A stretch of 63,720 bases of DNA, the filler included, from Reticulomyxa filosa (lineage: Eukaryota; Protista; Foraminifera), in assembly GCA_000512085.1 (NCBI GenBank). It is 22 parts of 22 records of this genome, joined end to end, with 100 filler letters (N's around TTAATTAATTAA, not from the genome) between each part and the next. Parts side by side here need not be neighbours in the genome. Positions count along the whole stretch, not along the records: positions 54,500 to 60,396 come from ASPP01000990.1; 21 more parts are not named here. The stretch is one strand, 5' to 3'. Below, one piece after another: positions 54,500 to 60,496 of the stretch. The translations under genes were made by a program, and so were the position numbers. How positions within the stretch are numbered: position 1 is the stretch's first letter; every line of letters begins with the position of its first letter. The notes beneath the pieces were generated by a model, which searched no databases, was not told the origin of the DNA, and saw only the letters and a program-made list of their open reading frames with translations.

Positions 54500-54535
<36 letters not shown>

Positions 54536-54574
54536 AAAAAAAATGTGAAAAAAAAAAAAAATGATCCGACATAC

Positions 54575-55026
54575 CATTTGTCCAAAAGAACACTGGATCT
54601 GTGGCAGGGCTGCCCAAACTTTCGACAAACCAATAAAAAATGTATCGCGGATTGGACACATCCACGTTAATGTATCCAGAAAACTATTTTGACGTTGTTT
54701 GATGGAAGAGAATGGATTTTACGAGTTTGGGACAAAAAGGAAAGAGGGAGGGGGGAAAGGAACAAAAATGCGGATGGCGAATCTGCGCCAGCGAAATGCA
54801 AGTTCATACCATAGTAAAATCAGCACCTGAGGGCAAACCAGGCAAGGATGTGATTTGGCTTTGCAGAACTGCTGCTGGATAATCAGGTCGCCTGCCATAG
54901 ACTGTAAAAGTAAGATATTTTTGGTTTTTTTGTCAAACAAACATGTTCAAGATATAATTTCTCTCAAATTCTTGCAGTTTTACCTGAGGCGGCAAAATAA
55001 AAAGCACCCAACAAAGTGTACAACAT
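54575..55026 (-). CDS. Serine carboxypeptidase (S10), 5' part, 3 exons
   Basis: Signal-like MLYTLLGAFYFAAS|VYG...ITSLPGLP...|FSGYINVDVSNPRYIFYWFVESLGSPATDPVFFWTNG. Confidence 0.92.
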
Positions 55027-55365
55027 CTTTGTCCAATAAGATCAATACCACGAACAACCAAATTAATAAAATTGGGGCTCAACAAAACGCTCGTGTTTGT
55101 CTCAGCTCTTGTTTTAAGTGAACAAACTTATACTTGCCATTTCAAATGCAAATTTCTATATTTTCATGTCGAGTGGTAAGGCATGATTACATTACAGGGT
55201 AGTGAAAAGCTGCTTATCAACAGAAAATTAAAGCGAAAACGTAAGGTACATTTTAAATGAAAGTCATTCCAAAACGACTACAACTTGATTGTAACCAGAC
55301 ACAGTAGTAGTTTTTTTCTGAAATAAAAAAAAGGGATATTTTCTGTTACATTAAGTAGCAGCACG

Positions 55366-58300
55366 ATGTCAAAAGCCCTTGTAAAGATTGGATCAAAAAA
55401 ATATGGACTTAAACTAACAACGGTAACAGTTGCAGGTCTGAGAGAACAGATAATAGAAGTGAGCAAAAATGAACAACGAGGGAACGTACTGACGAGAGTC
55501 GTTGATTCGTGTGGAAATGATATTGAAACAAACCAACATCTTAGAAGGCTTGTTAAAGATGGTCGTCTTCTTTTCTTTGCTGAATTTCAACCAAGTTATT
55601 CTTTTGTTTATCTCAAGCGTGAATAATCATTCTATTAACACTTGCAAAATAAGATGTAAATAAAATACGAATAGAATCTACAAAAAAGAAAGATGTGGAA
55701 GAAAAAAAAGAAGCAACAACGCCACTAGCATCGTCATTATTGCCATCGCCATCGTCGCCATTACCGTTATCACCATTACCATTGCTGCCATCATGTCATG
55801 AAATGAAGAATCCCTTGGTGTTATTGACAGGAGCAATGAAATACAAAAAAATGACATATTTGCAAAATGCCAAACATGATCTAATTTATTGCAAAAATTG
55901 TTTAAGCAAAAATTTGGTTATCAAGTATTTAATACTTTGAATTCACAAAATGCAAATAGTGAATCGCTAACTTTGAACGATTTGAATAAGTTTATTTTGA
56001 AGTATGCTTTAAATTTGAATGACAATTCTCCGAATAAGAAATCGTATGATGGGTTGATATTTGTTTGGTGTGGATATGGAAATAATGGAGATATTGTGAT
56101 CACAAGTGATGAAAAAAAAAAACCTTTCAAAGATATTCAAGAAGATTTTGTGATGAAAACAGATTATTTTGTAGGAAAACCAAAAATATTTATGAAAATT
56201 GAATTTACAGATCAACAAAATCTTTCTTCTTCTTCTTCTTCTTCAACTCGAATCAAAAATACAAAAGAAATTAAATCTAATGAAAATAAAATAAGATATA
56301 ACCAAGATGTTGATATTTTCACTATTTGTGCAAGCATTCCAAAGAAATCAATTATTAACAAATCAGAAATTGCAAACAAAAAAAAGAAAAATATTTTACA
56401 GAAATTTTTTGCCAAGTAGTCGAAAAGAATATGAACAAGAGTTTATTATTTATTGTCAATCAAGTAATCCAATTGATAAATGATCCCATTTTAGATGCAC
56501 AAGTTGCACAAACTACTACCTCGGCCACAAATTTTGATATTATTCTAGTTCCACGATCTATTACATCTTCAACACAGATTATGCGACAGCAAAATGATGA
56601 TATTAAACAAGAAACAAATGAAATTTTTCAAATTCCCAAAAATATTAAAAAATCTTTGAATTATCACAAACATTGGAATGAAAATTGGAAAACATCAACA
56701 GTTGAAGCTGCCAAAATGGTTGAGCAAATAATTAAAGCAAAAGAACAAGGATTAATTGTTATTGCTAGCAACACTTCTCAATGGGGCAAAATATCACATG
56801 AAAATACAAACAAAATTAACGAAGATGCTTTGTTCAGTAAATTGATAAAAAGTAAACAAGTGGACAAACAAGTATTTGGTGAATATTGGATTTATATAAT
56901 CAAAAATAAAGTGGTGGTATTGGATGATATAAATATCGATGGCAATGTATACGTTGTCGATTGCGAAATTCAGTGTAAAGGGAGAGTCAATATAACAATG
57001 GAACTTTTTGCTACAAAGGATGCAATAATTGATGTCAAGTTGGCACATATTATTTCTCCAATTCAATGGAACACCAAATTACACCATGACATTCCAGTAG
57101 AACTTCAACGCTTAAACGACATGATAAATGAGTGCTTTGGGATAAAATATTTTGATGAGGCCATTATTTATACGAAAGAAGCTTTAAAACTTTCTGTTGA
57201 AGCTTTTGGGACTAGTCATCCTTATGTTGGCGATTTTAACAATTCGCAAGGAAACTTATATTTTCAAAATGAGCAATATGACAAGGCGATTGTATGCTAC
57301 AAAAAATCGTTGAAAATTCGATTGGATATTTTTGGAATGAATCATATCGATGTCGCTTGGGCGTACAATAATTTAGGGAGTGTACATATTAAAGAATTGC
57401 AATATGCCAAATCAGTTCAATGTTTTGAAAAATCATTAAAAATAAGACTAAGTATTTTTGGAATAAAACACGCTGATGTTGCTTCGTCGTACAATAATTT
57501 GGGAGTTGCGCATTATTATAATGAAGAATACAATAAAGCAATTCAGTGCCATGAAAAATCATTAAAGATCAGATTGGAGCTTTTTGGTATCCATCATATT
57601 GATGTTGCTTTATCTTATAATAACTTAGGGGTTGTCTATAGCAAGAAAGAACAACATGACAAGGTTATCGAATATAATCAAAGGTCATTGAAAACGACAT
57701 TGAAAGTATACGGAATGAATCATATCGAAGTTGCATCTTTGTACTACAATATCGGAACTGCATATTACTATAAAAATGACTTTGATAAATCAATTGAAAA
57801 CCACGAAAAAACATTGAAAATCAGATTAAATATTTTAGGAAAAAATCATAGCGATGTTGCATTGTCATATGACAATTTAGGTGTTGCCTATTTTAATAAA
57901 ATGCAATACAATAAAGCGATTGAATGTTACGAAAACGCATTGGATATTAGATTGGAAATTCATGAGCCTAATCATGTCAACATTGCATTATCATACTACA
58001 ATTTAGGCGTTACTTATTTCAGTAAAGGTGACTATGACAAAGCAATTAGTTATCATCAAAAGTCATTAGACATGAGATTAGAAGGCTCGGATGTTAGCCG
58101 GATTGATATAGCTTTGTCTTACTTTAATTTAGGAACTGTATATGATAAGATCTCAGCGTTCGATAAAGCGATTGAATGTTATGAAAGAGCATTGAAAACC
58201 AGATTGGACATATTTGGGATAAAGCACAATGAAGTAGCTCTATCGTATTATTATCTGGGATGTAGCTATTACAATAAAGGACAACACGATAAAGCTGTTG

Positions 58301-59040
58301 AATGTCATGAAAAATCCCTGAAAATCAGAATAGATCTGTTTGGTATCAACCATGCGGACGTGGCTCTATCATATAACAATTTAGGAACTTCCTATTATGG
58401 CAAAGAACAACATAAAAAAGCAATTGATTGTTATGAAAAATCATTGAAAATCCGAATTGCTATTTATGGAATCAAGCATGTTGATGTTGCTTTGTCATAT
58501 AACAATTTGGGAGTTGTTTATTACTGCAAAGGGCAGTATAAGAAAGCAATTGAGTGTTATGAAAAGTCATTGAAAATAAGGCTGCACGTTTTTGGAATTA
58601 ATCATGGTGATGTTGCCATGTCGTACTATAATTTGGGGAGCGTATATGACAAAGATGCAAGGTATGACAAAGCAATTGAATATTACGAAAAATCTCTGAA
58701 GATTAGATTAAAGGTCTTTGGTATCAATCATACTGATGTCTCTGCATCTTACTACAACTTGGGATGTAGTTATTACAACAAAGAGCTATATGACAAAGCC
58801 ATAGAATACCATGAACATGCACTGCAAATACGAAAGACAATATTTAAAAGTGCAAAGATTGATATCGGTGATTCAAATTGTTGGTTGGGAATGGCCTTTG
58901 AGAAAAAAGGAGAGAAGGAAGCAGCATACAACTATTTTGAAGAAGCATGGAAGGTTTACAATGTGGTTTTAGGACAGTACCATGAATATACATTAGATGT
59001 TAAAGAGCAGGTCCGAAAATTAAATGCATCCCTTTTGTGA
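55366..59040 (+). CDS. PB1/ubiquitin-like + degenerate caspase-like (C14) + 14 x 42-aa TPR protein; frameshifts at ~55885 and ~56385 (pseudogene or assembly error)
   Basis: Exon 1 ends ~55594 and the intron ends ~55673. Caspase-like elements: NPLVLLTGAMKY, HDL..LQKLFKQKFGYQV, YDGLIFVWCGYG and GKPKIF. TPR consensus H.DVA.SYNNLG..Y....YDKAIE.YEKSLKIRL..FG.N. Confidence 0.85.
57217..58980 (+). repeat. Array of 14 tandem 126-bp (42-aa) TPR units
   Basis: Counted directly in the translation of ORF 56431-59040. Confidence 0.95.
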
Positions 59041-60496
59041 TTAGAATTACTATGAATTAGATTAATTAGATATTTGATACTTTTCTTTCTTTTGTTTTTT
59101 TTTATCTTGTGTGATGATCTTATCGAACTGAAAGCAGATGAGTCTTTATTTTTTTTTTTGCTAATACATCTTTTCATTTATTCATTTTATTTTTTTCAAT
59201 CTTTTTTCTCTTTAATTTGTTGAACTCTGGTAAGTTGTGTCTCTGACATTGAAGACTTACTATTTGGTTATTTTAATGACAAATAAAAATTGTGATGTCC
59301 TCTTTTTTGTTTTTAATTTTTGCGTTAGTTCTTTCTACGCATTTGCTAGCGAATAAGAATGCTTCGTCATATATTACTGTTTTTTCTTTTTTGAAATACA
59401 GAGTTGCCAGTGCTTGTAAATAGAATCAAATACGTCTCAGCAAGAAGAAAACTAAAGGTAGTCGATTTCACCAATTAAAAGTCATTTCCACTATTATTCG
59501 GGTTACAGAATAAGCATTTTCATAAATACAACCGAGAAAGGCCAATAATATTTATTACTGGTTCAATAAAGTTTATACATTTCAGACGTTTCAATTGCAT
59601 TGAGTAATCTCTGCGATAAAGCATCTTTCAGGCATATACAATGCCTACGTTTGAGTTGGAGATCATTTGAAAAAAATAAATCATTGTCTTCATTTTGTTT
59701 TGAAAAAAAAATGTTAATAGGTCTGGGTGAGACTTGCACTCACATCTACGCGGAATGTCAAAGTTTTCATCAAAGCTTAATATACTACTAAGGCGTTTAA
59801 GAGTTTGGAAACTTATATATGCCTTCGTATATTATCTGAAGACTTGATCCAGATAATCAAACTGTGGAAAACCACACATCATTTATCAATTCAAGTAGCC
59901 GGAACAAACAAACAAACAACAAAAATTGACCACTGATGTGGTAGGCGTATACTCTACTATTGAGTTACCAGACCATTTTATTTTTGAAAGTACTTATACT
60001 TTATATATAATAGATATACTGTTAATTTTCATTCAAAATAATAATACAGCAAAATATAAATATTTCTTTTATTAAAAAAAAAATACTTTTATTAACACAG
60101 TACTCCTAAGTTATAATTTTAATTACCACAGCCAAAAAATGAAGATATATTAAGATCACTTGGATGCAAATCTTCAATCACAAATGTAAATATACATTTA
60201 TTTTCTTGTCTTTTGAATCGCAATTTATACAAAAGCTATTGCCCAAGTCTAGTTATCTCATTTTCTAATTGGTTGGAAGAGTATTTTTGACAAAAATAAA
60301 ATCAGATGTAAAGAAATACACATTCTTTCAGAAATCAACACTTGATAATTTTCTCTTTCTTGGTTTTCAACCCATCAATGTCATGTATATCTCTTTNNNN
60401 NNNNNNNNNNNNNNNNNNNNNNNNNNNNNNNNNNNNNNNNTTAATTAATTAANNNNNNNNNNNNNNNNNNNNNNNNNNNNNNNNNNNNNNNNNNNN

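What the first reader, a model, noticed from the sequence alone, without database searches (positions are those of the whole stretch)
55366..59040. PB1-like / pseudo-caspase / TPR-array gene: candidate protist innate-immune or allorecognition sensor
Seen: joining one intron and two 1-nt frameshifts gives a small beta-grasp-like N-terminal domain, a Pro-rich linker, a caspase-fold-like segment, a ~250-aa unknown region and 14 TPRs. Known: C14 caspases carry the catalytic His in an S/G-H-G motif and the Cys in KPKxFxxQAC. Here these read WCGYG (56069-56080) and KPKIFMKIEF (from 56177), so both dyad residues appear lost. Inference: an effector/scaffold plus variable superstructure-repeat architecture resembles fungal NLR/HET proteins and bacterial TPR-caspase defence proteins, but lacks an NTPase domain. 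It could be a pseudo-caspase receptor family in a syncytial, self-fusing protist.
Basis: partly seen in the sequence, partly recalled or inferred. Interest (0 to 1): 0.8.

Follow-up and report, generated by a model that had tools for sequence, protein, structure and literature searches.

The report
Foram pseudo-caspase TPR family gene
A Reticulomyxa filosa gene, split in the draft assembly by two one-base gaps, encodes a PB1-like adaptor domain, a caspase-fold domain lacking both catalytic residues, an orphan domain and 14 TPR repeats; it belongs to an undescribed family of over a hundred such genes whose role is untested.

Summary
The piece is contig ASPP01000990.1 of the Reticulomyxa filosa draft genome. 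On the + strand, 55366-59040 reads as one gene. The parts are: a beta-grasp domain, a GT..AG intron, a Pro/Ser-rich linker, a caspase-fold domain, a 177-aa orphan domain, and 14 exact 42-aa KLC/NPHP3-type TPR units. Two single-base deficits break the caspase domain, so the public annotation splits the gene into 319-aa and 819-aa models. Intact paralogues run straight through both breaks.

An AlphaFold model of the closest intact paralogue matches CED-3, caspase-9 and c-FLIP-L (Z 20-22). Its N-terminal domain matches PB1 and CIDE-N domains (Z 8-9). Family alignment puts Tyr at the catalytic His position and Phe at the Cys position.

The family has about 159 clusters at 50% identity. Every member carrying the orphan domain that I looked up is from R. 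filosa. Among members with the orphan domain, 28 of 44 have lost both dyad residues. Relatives fused to Ank, WD40, SPRY, NACHT or TRAF keep both.

dN/dS of 0.24-0.30 against the nearest paralogue shows the dead-enzyme domain is under selection. No NTPase is present. The immune or allorecognition role is untested. No reads could be obtained, so I cannot tell whether the frameshifts are real.

The parts
55366..55594 (+). Exon 1: PB1-like beta-grasp domain (76 codons plus 1 base)
   Evidence: ORF. The family profile A6 has the Bem1 PB1 domain as best PDB hit, E 0.004. The AF2 model of paralogue P0019, residues 1-78, matches PB1 of MAP2K5/MEKK3/p62/Par6 with Z 8.8-9.3 at rmsd about 2 A, and CIDE-N with Z 8.6. 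No Pfam PB1 hit.
55595..55692 (+). Intron 1 (GT..AG, 98 nt). The alternative in-phase acceptor at 55652-55653 gives a 59-nt intron, as in the public model
   Evidence: Sequence. Public model P0080 mapped. R. filosa mean intron length is 87 nt (PMC13746701). No RNA data were available to choose between the two acceptors.
55693..55802 (+). Low-complexity linker (Lys/Glu-rich, then Pro/Ser/Leu-rich)
   Evidence: Translation. Not conserved in paralogues.
55803..56559 (+). Pseudo-caspase domain, read in three frames because of two one-base deficits
   Evidence: The pieces align co-linearly with intact paralogues. Paralogue P0003 passes the Pfam Peptidase_C14 gathering score (24.1 bits against 21.4, E 3.3e-5). 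AF2 plus Foldseek gives CED-3 and caspase-11/4/6/3/7/9, E about 4e-9, prob 1.0. VIA gives Z 21.9 for CED-3 and 19.7 for c-FLIP-L.
55884..55888 (+). Frame break 1: one base missing between 55886 and 55887 (window A-T-T-T-A; nearest paralogue A-T-T-C-T-A)
   Evidence: DNA alignment with L003. Paralogues read D-L-x-L-L-Q without a gap here.
56075..56077 (+). TAT (Tyr) at the catalytic His position
   Evidence: hmmalign table. In the family profile this column aligns with the catalytic His of Dronc and caspase-3. Alignment with S-G-H-G relatives.
56204..56206 (+). TTT (Phe) at the catalytic Cys position
   Evidence: the tenth residue of the K-P-K motif aligns with the Cys of the Q-A-C-R-G-type motif in Dronc, caspase-3 and dyad-bearing foraminiferal relatives.
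56224..56244 (+). (TTC)7 microsatellite encoding a Ser run, in the loop equivalent to the caspase intersubunit linker
   Evidence: TRF. The loop has low confidence in the AF2 model. The repeat is 12 nt shorter in paralogue L003.
56359..56391 (+). Frame break 2: one base missing somewhere in an A-rich stretch (A8 at 56378-56385, A5 at 56387-56391)
   Evidence: The frame-1 reading Y-F-T-E-I-F from 56392 matches the conserved paralogue motif, and frame 2 carries the preceding strand. There is a 14-nt indel relative to L003 here. No GT donor lies in the interval, so it is not an intron.
56626..57156 (+). 177-aa family-specific alpha/beta domain ('MID'), always directly upstream of the TPR array
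   Evidence: Found in 101 of 152 family sequences held (the 150 listed representatives plus two hits). AF2 pLDDT 90.9, pTM 0.86. No convincing match: Foldseek PDB E >= 0.28, VIA best Z 3.8, ESM-Atlas TM <= 0.45, no consistent Pfam family, no Walker A motif.
57190..58953 (+). 14 TPR units of exactly 42 residues (KLC / nephrocystin-3 type)
   Evidence: Pfam TPR_12 E 1.4e-169, TPR_10 E 9.7e-109, TPR_NPHP3 E 7.4e-50. Period-42 register. TRF period 126 nt.
58954..59040 (+). C-terminal tail and stop codon
   Evidence: ORF end.

Best explanation
SHOWN. 55366-59040 is one Reticulomyxa filosa gene, not the two annotated ones. It encodes, in order: a PB1-like beta-grasp domain, a linker, a caspase-fold domain with Tyr and Phe in place of the catalytic His and Cys, a 177-aa orphan domain, and 14 KLC-type TPRs. 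It belongs to a large modular family specific to this lineage. In that family, the caspase domain linked to the orphan domain and the TPRs has mostly lost its dyad but stays under purifying selection.

INFERRED. The protein is a non-catalytic scaffold or receptor. The TPR solenoid would bind a protein ligand. The PB1-like domain would mediate head-to-tail association with other PB1-like-bearing family members. These include paralogues that keep His and Cys, such as RFI_05622, which combines a PB1-like domain, a caspase domain and a TRAF-type zinc finger. The dead caspase domain would pair with, and so regulate or template, a live caspase domain, as c-FLIP-L does with caspase-8. The orphan domain takes the place that an NTPase holds in NLR/Apaf-1 proteins, and may act as the switch or oligomerisation module.

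UNRESOLVED. Whether this particular copy is intact in the organism or a recent pseudogene.
For: One gene:
- The window's pieces align end to end with uninterrupted paralogues.
- The caspase fold's last helix and strand lie in the 5' end of the 869-aa ORF.

Organism and annotation.

Caspase fold and homology:
- Pfam hit on P0003.
- phmmer links to solid Peptidase_C14 proteins.
- The family profile hits Dronc at 1.9e-14 and caspase-3 at 3e-13.
- Foldseek and VIA give Z about 20-22.

Dyad loss and its link to architecture:
- With the orphan domain: 28 lost both residues, 10 kept His only, 2 kept Cys only, 2 kept both.
- Without it: 22 kept both.
- The TPR-linked clade has 99% SH-aLRT support, and dyad-bearing members are basal under midpoint rooting.

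Selection: dN/dS is 0.24 for the caspase core and 0.30 for the caspase C-terminus plus the orphan domain, at dS about 0.4-0.5, against paralogue L003, which shares the Tyr/Phe state.

PB1-like domain. My HMM finds it on dyad-bearing paralogues P0082, P0035, P0038 and P0112.

No NTPase.
Against: - No expression, interaction or polymorphism data exist for any member.
- The fold was modelled on a paralogue 51-61% identical to the window gene, not on the window's own broken domain.
- Pfam does not recognise the window's own pieces as Peptidase_C14 or PB1.
- A profile of seven dyad-less members alone found no caspase in the PDB, so sequence-level homology rests partly on intermediates.
- This copy carries two frame breaks. 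Its nearest paralogue carries an in-frame stop and two more indels. This subgroup may therefore be decaying.
- KLC-type TPRs also serve as cargo adaptors, so a role in sensing is not implied.
Confidence: 0.6

Rival explanations
1. This copy is a recent pseudogene. The two one-base deficits are real, and the locus no longer makes the full protein. Family-level function is unaffected.
For: There are two independent frame breaks. At break 1 the nearest paralogue has a C that is absent here, which is not a simple homopolymer-length difference as aligned. The nearest paralogue, L003, has an in-frame TAA in the same loop plus 2-nt and 1-nt deletions in TPR 1-2. L002 holds a truncated copy. This is the birth-and-death pattern typical of large families.
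Against: The 869-codon ORF downstream is still fully open in a 30% GC sequence. dN/dS is 0.24-0.30. Both breaks are single missing bases beside T or A runs. If the original codon was TTA rather than CTA, break 1 is a T4 run read as T3. The assembly is a fragmented draft with N50 3.6 kb.
Confidence: 0.5
2. There are two separate genes, as in the public annotation: a 319-aa protein and an independent 819-aa TPR protein starting at 56581.
For: GenBank gene models on ASPP01000990.1. ATG codons exist at 56431 and 56581.
Against: The 319-aa model needs an invented intron (55923-55960) that deletes conserved caspase residues, and it ends in out-of-frame sequence. The caspase fold would be cut in two. 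More than 20 family representatives carry all four modules in one gene model, and the look-alike in L003 reads through both of the window's break points in a single frame.
Confidence: 0.05
3. The family has nothing to do with cell death or non-self sensing. It acts as cargo or cytoskeletal adaptors, with kinesin-light-chain-type TPRs binding cargo and PB1-like domains building scaffolds, serving the extensive microtubule transport of this giant reticulopodial cell.
For: The TPR type is that of kinesin light chain and nephrocystin-3. TPR units are not unusually similar to each other. Some members carry Kelch propellers. PB1 and Par3-type domains are polarity scaffolds.
Against: This does not explain why a caspase-derived domain is retained under selection. 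Nor does it explain why dyad-bearing relatives are fused to NACHT, TRAF-type zinc finger, SPRY, ankyrin and WD40 modules, which are typical of immune or death signalling.
Confidence: 0.15
4. The domain is still a protease that uses non-canonical residues, for example the nearly invariant Cys two residues before the former His position in the W-C-G-x-G motif.
For: That Cys replaces the Ser of canonical S-G-H-G relatives and is conserved across the clade. About a third of clade members keep His.
Against: No precedent is known to me in clan CD. His and Cys are lost in a mosaic pattern, consistent with relaxed catalytic constraint. The residues that follow the Cys in canonical relatives (the C-R-G motif) are also lost.
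Confidence: 0.05

Closest known systems
c-FLIP-L protease-like domain (vertebrate pseudo-caspase)
   Same: It has a caspase fold (VIA Z 19.7, rmsd 2.4 A, 182 residues). Both catalytic residues are substituted. An N-terminal homotypic adaptor precedes the dead protease domain. It regulates a live caspase by heterodimerising with it.
   Different: c-FLIP uses two DED death-fold domains, not a PB1-like beta-grasp. It has no orphan domain or TPR array. It is a single gene, not a family of more than 100 members. Heterodimerisation is only inferred here.
[quoted passage not shown] 2018 (PMC5982838)
   Same: These are the best structural and profile matches: Z 21.9 and 21.2, and Dronc E 1.9e-14. They score closer than metacaspases (Z 14-16). 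This agrees with the published clustering of Reticulomyxa and animal caspases.
   Different: The window protein lacks His and Cys. The prodomain is PB1-like rather than CARD. The C-terminal orphan domain and TPRs are absent from animal caspases. That paper did not describe this architecture or the dyad loss.
Bacterial TPR-CHAT (Csx29 of type III-E CRISPR 'Craspase') and other prokaryotic caspase-TPR conflict proteins
   Same: They join TPRs to a clan-CD caspase-like domain in one polypeptide, with the TPRs acting as the regulatory or partner-binding part.
   Different: The domain order is reversed (TPR at the N-terminus). CHAT is catalytically active and only distantly related (SAVED-CHAT Z 12.2). 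PADLOC models match only the TPRs.
TPR-type NLR/STAND proteins (fungal NB-ARC/NACHT-TPR, nephrocystin-3)
   Same: They share the tripartite logic of N-terminal adaptor or effector, central module and C-terminal TPR_10/TPR_12 array. They also form a large, modular family with domain shuffling and pseudogenes.
   Different: Here there is no NACHT or NB-ARC domain and no P-loop; an orphan 177-aa domain sits in that position. Repeat units are not highly similar to one another. One metagenomic relative does carry caspase plus NACHT (P0124).
PB1 domains (p62, Par6/aPKC, MEKK2/3-MEK5, Bem1) and CIDE-N domains
   Same: The beta-beta-alpha-beta-beta-alpha-beta grasp matches these best (Z 8.2-9.3, rmsd about 2 A, about 70 residues). 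There is a weak profile hit to Bem1 PB1 (E 0.004). An acidic D-x-x-G-x-x-I-E-T-D stretch lies where the OPCA motif would be.
   Different: It is below Pfam thresholds for PB1 and CIDE-N. PB1 cannot be distinguished from CIDE-N or Par3-NTD on this evidence.

Membership tests
Peptidase C14 (caspase) family | Caspase-hemoglobinase fold | tested here: met
   AF2 model of paralogue P0019 (pLDDT 86). Foldseek top hits are all caspases, prob 1.0. VIA Z 21.9 for CED-3. The model is of a paralogue, not of the window's broken domain.
Peptidase C14 (caspase) family | Significant sequence match to the family profile | tested here: inconclusive
   The window pieces give no Pfam hit at E <= 1. Paralogue P0003 passes the gathering score. 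The family profile including intermediates hits Dronc and caspase-3 at 1e-13 to 1e-14. A profile of dyad-less members only finds nothing.
Peptidase C14 (caspase) family | Catalytic His (S/G-H-G motif) | tested here: not met
   Tyr, codon 56075-56077.
Peptidase C14 (caspase) family | Catalytic Cys (Q-A-C-x-G-type motif after K-P-K) | tested here: not met
   Phe, codon 56204-56206. The residues following it are also not conserved.
PB1 domain | Beta-grasp fold of PB1 topology | tested here: met
   VIA Z 8.1-9.3 to ten PB1 structures over model residues 1-78. Secondary structure.
PB1 domain | Match to the Pfam PB1 profile (PF00564) | tested here: not met
   No PB1 hit among 67 family members at E <= 1. 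Weak hits to GRHL1_C (12 members), DWNN (4) and CIDE-N (2). Profile against PDB gives Bem1 PB1 at E 0.004 only.
PB1 domain | OPCA acidic motif and/or conserved beta-1 Lys that mediate front-to-back binding | tested here: inconclusive
   The family consensus has a K-I-T-D-x-N-G-x-x-I-E-T-D stretch and Lys residues in the first strand. Equivalence to OPCA was judged by eye only.
KLC / NPHP3-type TPR array (TPR_12, TPR_10) | Tandem 42-residue TPR units matching the profiles | tested here: met
   TPR_12 E 1.4e-169. 14 units in exact register.
STAND NTPase / NLR | NACHT or NB-ARC P-loop NTPase domain | tested here: not met
   No Pfam NTPase hit. No Walker A motif in any piece. The orphan domain has no NTPase-like structural match.
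Fungal HET/NLR-type allorecognition genes | Highly similar, recombining repeat units with hypervariable positions, and allelic polymorphism | tested here: not met
   Repeat units are on average 60% and at most 77% identical at the DNA level. Polymorphism is not testable because no other strains or reads were available.

The most novel reading that the evidence does not exclude
Foraminifera may run a caspase-activation platform built from different parts than the animal apoptosome or inflammasome. PB1-like beta-grasp domains would replace death-fold adaptors, and an orphan 177-aa domain would replace the STAND NTPase. A large, diversifying set of TPR-bearing pseudo-caspases would act as the receptor arm. 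These receptors would recruit and gate live PB1-caspases in response to pathogens, or to non-self cytoplasm after fusion of reticulopodial networks.
Probability: 0.2. Interest if true: 0.8.

Novelty: new variant of a known kind. Interest (0 to 1): 0.55.

Why it matters
Caspases close to animal ones were already reported in Reticulomyxa. This analysis adds four points about them:

- Most belong to a modular family in which the protease domain has been turned into a conserved dead enzyme and tied to TPR arrays.
- Their 'prodomain' is PB1/CIDE-like rather than death-fold.
- A confidently folded domain with no recognisable relative sits where NLRs carry their NTPase.
- Dyad-bearing relatives are fused to NACHT, TRAF-type zinc finger, SPRY, ankyrin and WD40 modules.

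If the family regulates live caspases, it would be an independent, non-animal example of c-FLIP-like control and of receptor-type caspase platforms. That bears on how regulated cell death and self/non-self control arose in a giant syncytial protist. Practically, it also shows that the public annotation of this locus, and probably of many family members, is fragmented.

Tried and rejected
- **Pfam on the window's own pieces.** Nothing but TPRs.
- **Profile of seven dyad-less members against the PDB.** No caspase hit.
- **Reads.** No sequencing run was listed for the locus, so read laying was not used and the frameshifts remain unchecked.
- **Exact-protein lookup of the 869-aa ORF.** Not on record.
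- **Intron explanations for the two frame breaks.** Rejected. Paralogues leave no room at break 1. There is no GT donor in 56359-56391. The T-T-T-T-A-C-A-G that looks like an acceptor encodes the conserved F-T-E residues.
- **Orphan domain.** Foldseek PDB, VIA wide, ESM-Atlas by shape and by features, and a Pfam scan of 76 members gave no convincing match. Several VIA rows at Z 3.3-3.7 were cytidine-deaminase-fold proteins. I rejected this as noise for three reasons: Z is far below the tool's stated background, no Zn-ligand motifs are present, and the second half of the domain is an all-beta meander.
- **EAD6 and DUF7671.** Weak Pfam hits that did not recur across members.
- **Genome paper.** The R. 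filosa genome paper itself is not held, so the sequencing chemistry could not be confirmed.
- **Joined translation.** I did not build or search a joined, spliced or frame-repaired translation. Each piece was used by reference, and intact paralogues stood in for folding.
Full report
**What the piece is.** The usable piece (54500-60396, about 30% GC) is identical to contig ASPP01000990.1 (5,897 bp) of the Reticulomyxa filosa draft assembly GCA_000512085.1. That assembly has 50,809 scaffolds, an N50 of 3.6 kb and a mean intron length of 87 nt (PMC13746701). GenBank annotates two genes here. One is a 319-aa model, P0080, 100% identical to the window over its exons. The other is an 819-aa model starting at 56581.

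**Checking the observation.** Three-frame translation and the raw sequence confirm the following on the + strand:
- An 86-codon ORF starts at 55366, with a GT at 55595.
- An in-phase AG acceptor lies at 55691-55692. A second in-phase acceptor at 55652-55653 is the one the public model uses. I cannot choose between them without RNA.
- A Lys/Glu-rich then Pro/Ser/Leu-rich linker follows.
- Homologous sequence then runs successively in three frames (coordinate mod 3 = 0, then 2, then 1) and ends in the 869-codon ORF 56431-59040.

Pfam sees only TPR families in the large ORF (TPR_12 E 1.4e-169, TPR_10, TPR_NPHP3). The repeats are 14 units of exactly 42 residues.

**One gene, shown by paralogues.**
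- A word-indexed search with the non-TPR start of the big ORF found only R. filosa proteins. Several are uninterrupted and co-linear with all of the window's pieces.
- At break 1 the paralogues read D-L-x-L-L-Q with no gap. The window reads D-L-I in one frame and L-L-Q in the next.
- DNA alignment with the nearest paralogue (L003, contig ASPP01014030.1, 88% identity) shows exactly one base missing between 55886 and 55887.
- At break 2, the conserved Y/N-F-T-E-I-F motif is read in frame 1 from 56392 and the preceding strand in frame 2. The shift must therefore lie in 56359-56391, an A-rich stretch (A8, G, A5) that differs from L003 by a 14-nt indel.
- Neither site can be an intron. There is no room at break 1, and no GT donor at break 2.
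- The public 319-aa model bridges break 1 with an invented intron (55923-55960) and runs into out-of-frame sequence.

Every search used the pieces by reference, and folding used intact paralogues.

**The caspase claim.**
- The window's pieces alone give no Peptidase_C14 hit. A profile of seven dyad-less members finds no caspase in the PDB.
- Paralogue P0003 passes the Pfam gathering score: E 3.3e-5, 24.1 bits against 21.4, covering profile positions 5-218 of 233.
- An exhaustive phmmer search with the non-TPR part of P0001 found 159 cluster representatives. These grade into proteins with canonical S-G-H-G and K-P-K-x-F-x-x-x-A-C motifs, which are strong Peptidase_C14 members (E 1e-10 to 1e-27).
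- A 65-row family profile hits Dronc (1.9e-14) and caspase-3 (3e-13). The family's variable column aligns with the catalytic His, and the tenth residue of the K-P-K motif aligns with the catalytic Cys.
- An AlphaFold2 model of the closest full-length paralogue gave pLDDT 86.3 and pTM 0.78. That paralogue is P0019 (RFI_15137), 51-61% identical to the window.
- Foldseek returns only caspases at the top: CED-3, caspase-11/4/6/3/7/1/9 and c-FLIP-L, with E down to 4e-9 and prob 1.0.
- The Foldseek-independent VIA search gives CED-3 Z 21.9 (rmsd 2.4 A, 189 residues), caspase-9 Z 21.2, c-FLIP-L Z 19.7, MALT1 Z 18.1, metacaspases Z 14-16 and legumain/GPI8 Z about 14.

So the fold is a caspase fold, nearest to animal caspases. 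This agrees with Klim et al. 2018, who noted caspase-like proteins in Reticulomyxa clustering with animal caspases (PMC5982838). In the window, the His position is Tyr and the Cys position is Phe.

**Family-wide dyad states.**
- In an hmmalign table of cluster representatives, 24 keep His and Cys, 15 are Tyr/Tyr, 13 are His/Tyr, and the rest are mixed.
- Cross-tabulated with architecture, for caspase-like domains followed by the orphan domain: 28 lost both residues, 10 kept His only, 2 kept Cys only, 2 kept both.
- Among those without the orphan domain, 22 kept both.
- The dyad-bearing relatives carry other partner modules: SPRY (Bolivina argentea, another foraminifer), ankyrin, WD40, NACHT (a metagenomic contig) and a TRAF-type zinc finger (RFI_05622).
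- A quick maximum-likelihood tree puts the TPR-linked proteins in one clade (SH-aLRT 99, 38 rows). His and Cys are lost there in a mosaic pattern, and dyad-bearing proteins are basal under midpoint rooting. The root is not established, so the direction of change is an inference.

**The dead domain is under selection.** The nearest paralogue (L003) shares the Tyr/Phe state. Against it, Nei-Gojobori dN/dS is 0.24 over 147 codons of the caspase core. It is 0.30 over 251 codons of the caspase C-terminus plus the orphan domain, at dS about 0.4-0.5. The domain has therefore been kept for a non-catalytic role for most of the time since these two copies diverged.

**The N-terminal domain.**
- Pfam finds nothing significant. 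Across 67 members the recurrent weak hits are all beta-grasp families: GRHL1_C in 12 members, DWNN, CIDE-N, RA and ubiquitin-like.
- The family profile's best PDB hit is the Bem1 PB1 domain (E 0.004).
- In the AF2 model, residues 1-78 form a beta-beta-alpha-beta-beta-alpha-beta grasp.
- The best solved matches for this domain are PB1 domains: MAP2K5/MEKK Z 9.3 at rmsd 1.9 A, MEKK3 9.1, p62 9.0, Par6/aPKC 8.8, NBR1 8.7, TFG 8.4, Bem1 8.4 and Cdc24 8.2. Par3-NTD scores 8.7 and CIDE-N 8.6 and 8.3. Ubiquitin-like proteins score lower, at 7.8.
- Language-model neighbours point the same way, but these are leads only.

'PB1-like' is therefore a fair description at fold level. Membership of PB1 as opposed to CIDE-N is not settled. 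My HMM finds the same domain on dyad-bearing paralogues (P0082, P0035, P0038, P0112). That is the basis for the idea that it links dead and live caspase-domain proteins.

**The 'unknown region'.** Its first ~43 residues complete the caspase fold. After a short linker comes a discrete 177-aa domain (56626-57156). This domain is present in 101 of the 152 family sequences held and always sits just before the TPRs. It occurs with varied N-terminal partners: PB1-like only, PB1-like plus caspase-like, or Kelch plus caspase-like.

It folds confidently (pLDDT 90.9, pTM 0.86) but has no convincing relative:
- Foldseek PDB gives E >= 0.28.
- VIA's best Z is 3.8.
- ESM-Atlas TM is at most 0.45.
- There is no consistent Pfam hit.
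- There is no Walker A motif.

Nearly invariant residues include an I-D-G-N-x-Y-x-x-x-C motif. Every member carrying this domain that I looked up is from R. filosa.

**Are the frameshifts real?** No sequencing run was listed, so this cannot be decided here.
- For artefact: both breaks are single missing bases beside T or A runs, the downstream 869 codons are intact, dN/dS is low, and the assembly is a rough draft.
- For real lesions: the paralogue has a C at break 1, so the difference is not a pure run-length change as aligned. The nearest paralogue has an in-frame TAA in the same loop plus 2-nt and 1-nt deletions in its first TPRs. A third locus (L002) holds a truncated copy.
- I put it at about even odds.

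**Function.**
- Shown: the architecture, the homology, the dyad loss, purifying selection, family size and modularity, and the absence of an NTPase.
- Inferred: a non-catalytic scaffold or receptor. The TPRs would bind a ligand, the PB1-like domain would mediate homotypic assembly, and the dead caspase domain would pair with live paralogues in the manner of c-FLIP-L.
It is compatible with the partner domains of the dyad-bearing relatives. However, TPR units are not unusually similar to each other (mean 60%, maximum 77% at the DNA level), PADLOC adds nothing, and a cytoskeletal-adaptor role is a live alternative.
- Full-text searches found no description of this architecture in foraminifera.

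**Verdict.** The biological role is open. I rate it a new variant of known kinds (pseudo-caspase; adaptor, central module and TPR receptor-like architecture) in an under-studied lineage, with an orphan central domain as the most unexplained part.

Noticed in passing
window 54570-54665 (- strand): A 32-residue exon fragment hits Pfam Peptidase_S10 (serine carboxypeptidase): E 4e-5, 23.6 bits, profile positions 22-48 of 420. The gene runs off the left edge of the contig and is oriented divergently from the TPR gene.
   Followed up: partly
window 54500-54561: A 62-nt A-rich tract (period-22 A19-G-A-G variant) lies at the very edge of the contig. It probably marks where the assembly broke.
   Followed up: no
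L003:3266-6473 (ASPP01014030.1): This is the nearest paralogue (88% DNA identity) and has the same Tyr/Phe dyad state. It is annotated as three separate genes (302, 266 and 410 aa). It has an in-frame TAA in the loop where the window has frame break 2, plus 2-nt and 1-nt deletions that scramble about 60 codons of TPR 1-2. It is probably a pseudogene.
   Followed up: yes
L002:918-1572 (ASPP01027574.1): A truncated copy: the PB1-like domain (76% identical to the window's) plus the first half of the caspase-like domain. Homology then stops. A protein-kinase gene lies on the other strand.
   Followed up: partly
window 56224-56244: A perfect (TTC)7 microsatellite encodes a Ser run in the loop equivalent to the caspase intersubunit linker. 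It is 12 nt shorter in the nearest paralogue.
   Followed up: partly
proteins P0124, P0135, P0082, P0100, P0109: Dyad-bearing caspase relatives from foraminifera or metagenomes are fused to NACHT, SPRY, TRAF-type zinc finger, WD40 or ankyrin repeats. This is a wider repertoire of caspase-plus-partner-module proteins that deserves its own survey.
   Followed up: partly
P0117 (RFI_04677, 846 aa): This partial model runs orphan domain, TPRs, then a Peptidase_C14 domain with His retained at the C-terminal end. It is either a different domain order or two adjacent family genes fused by the annotation.
   Followed up: no
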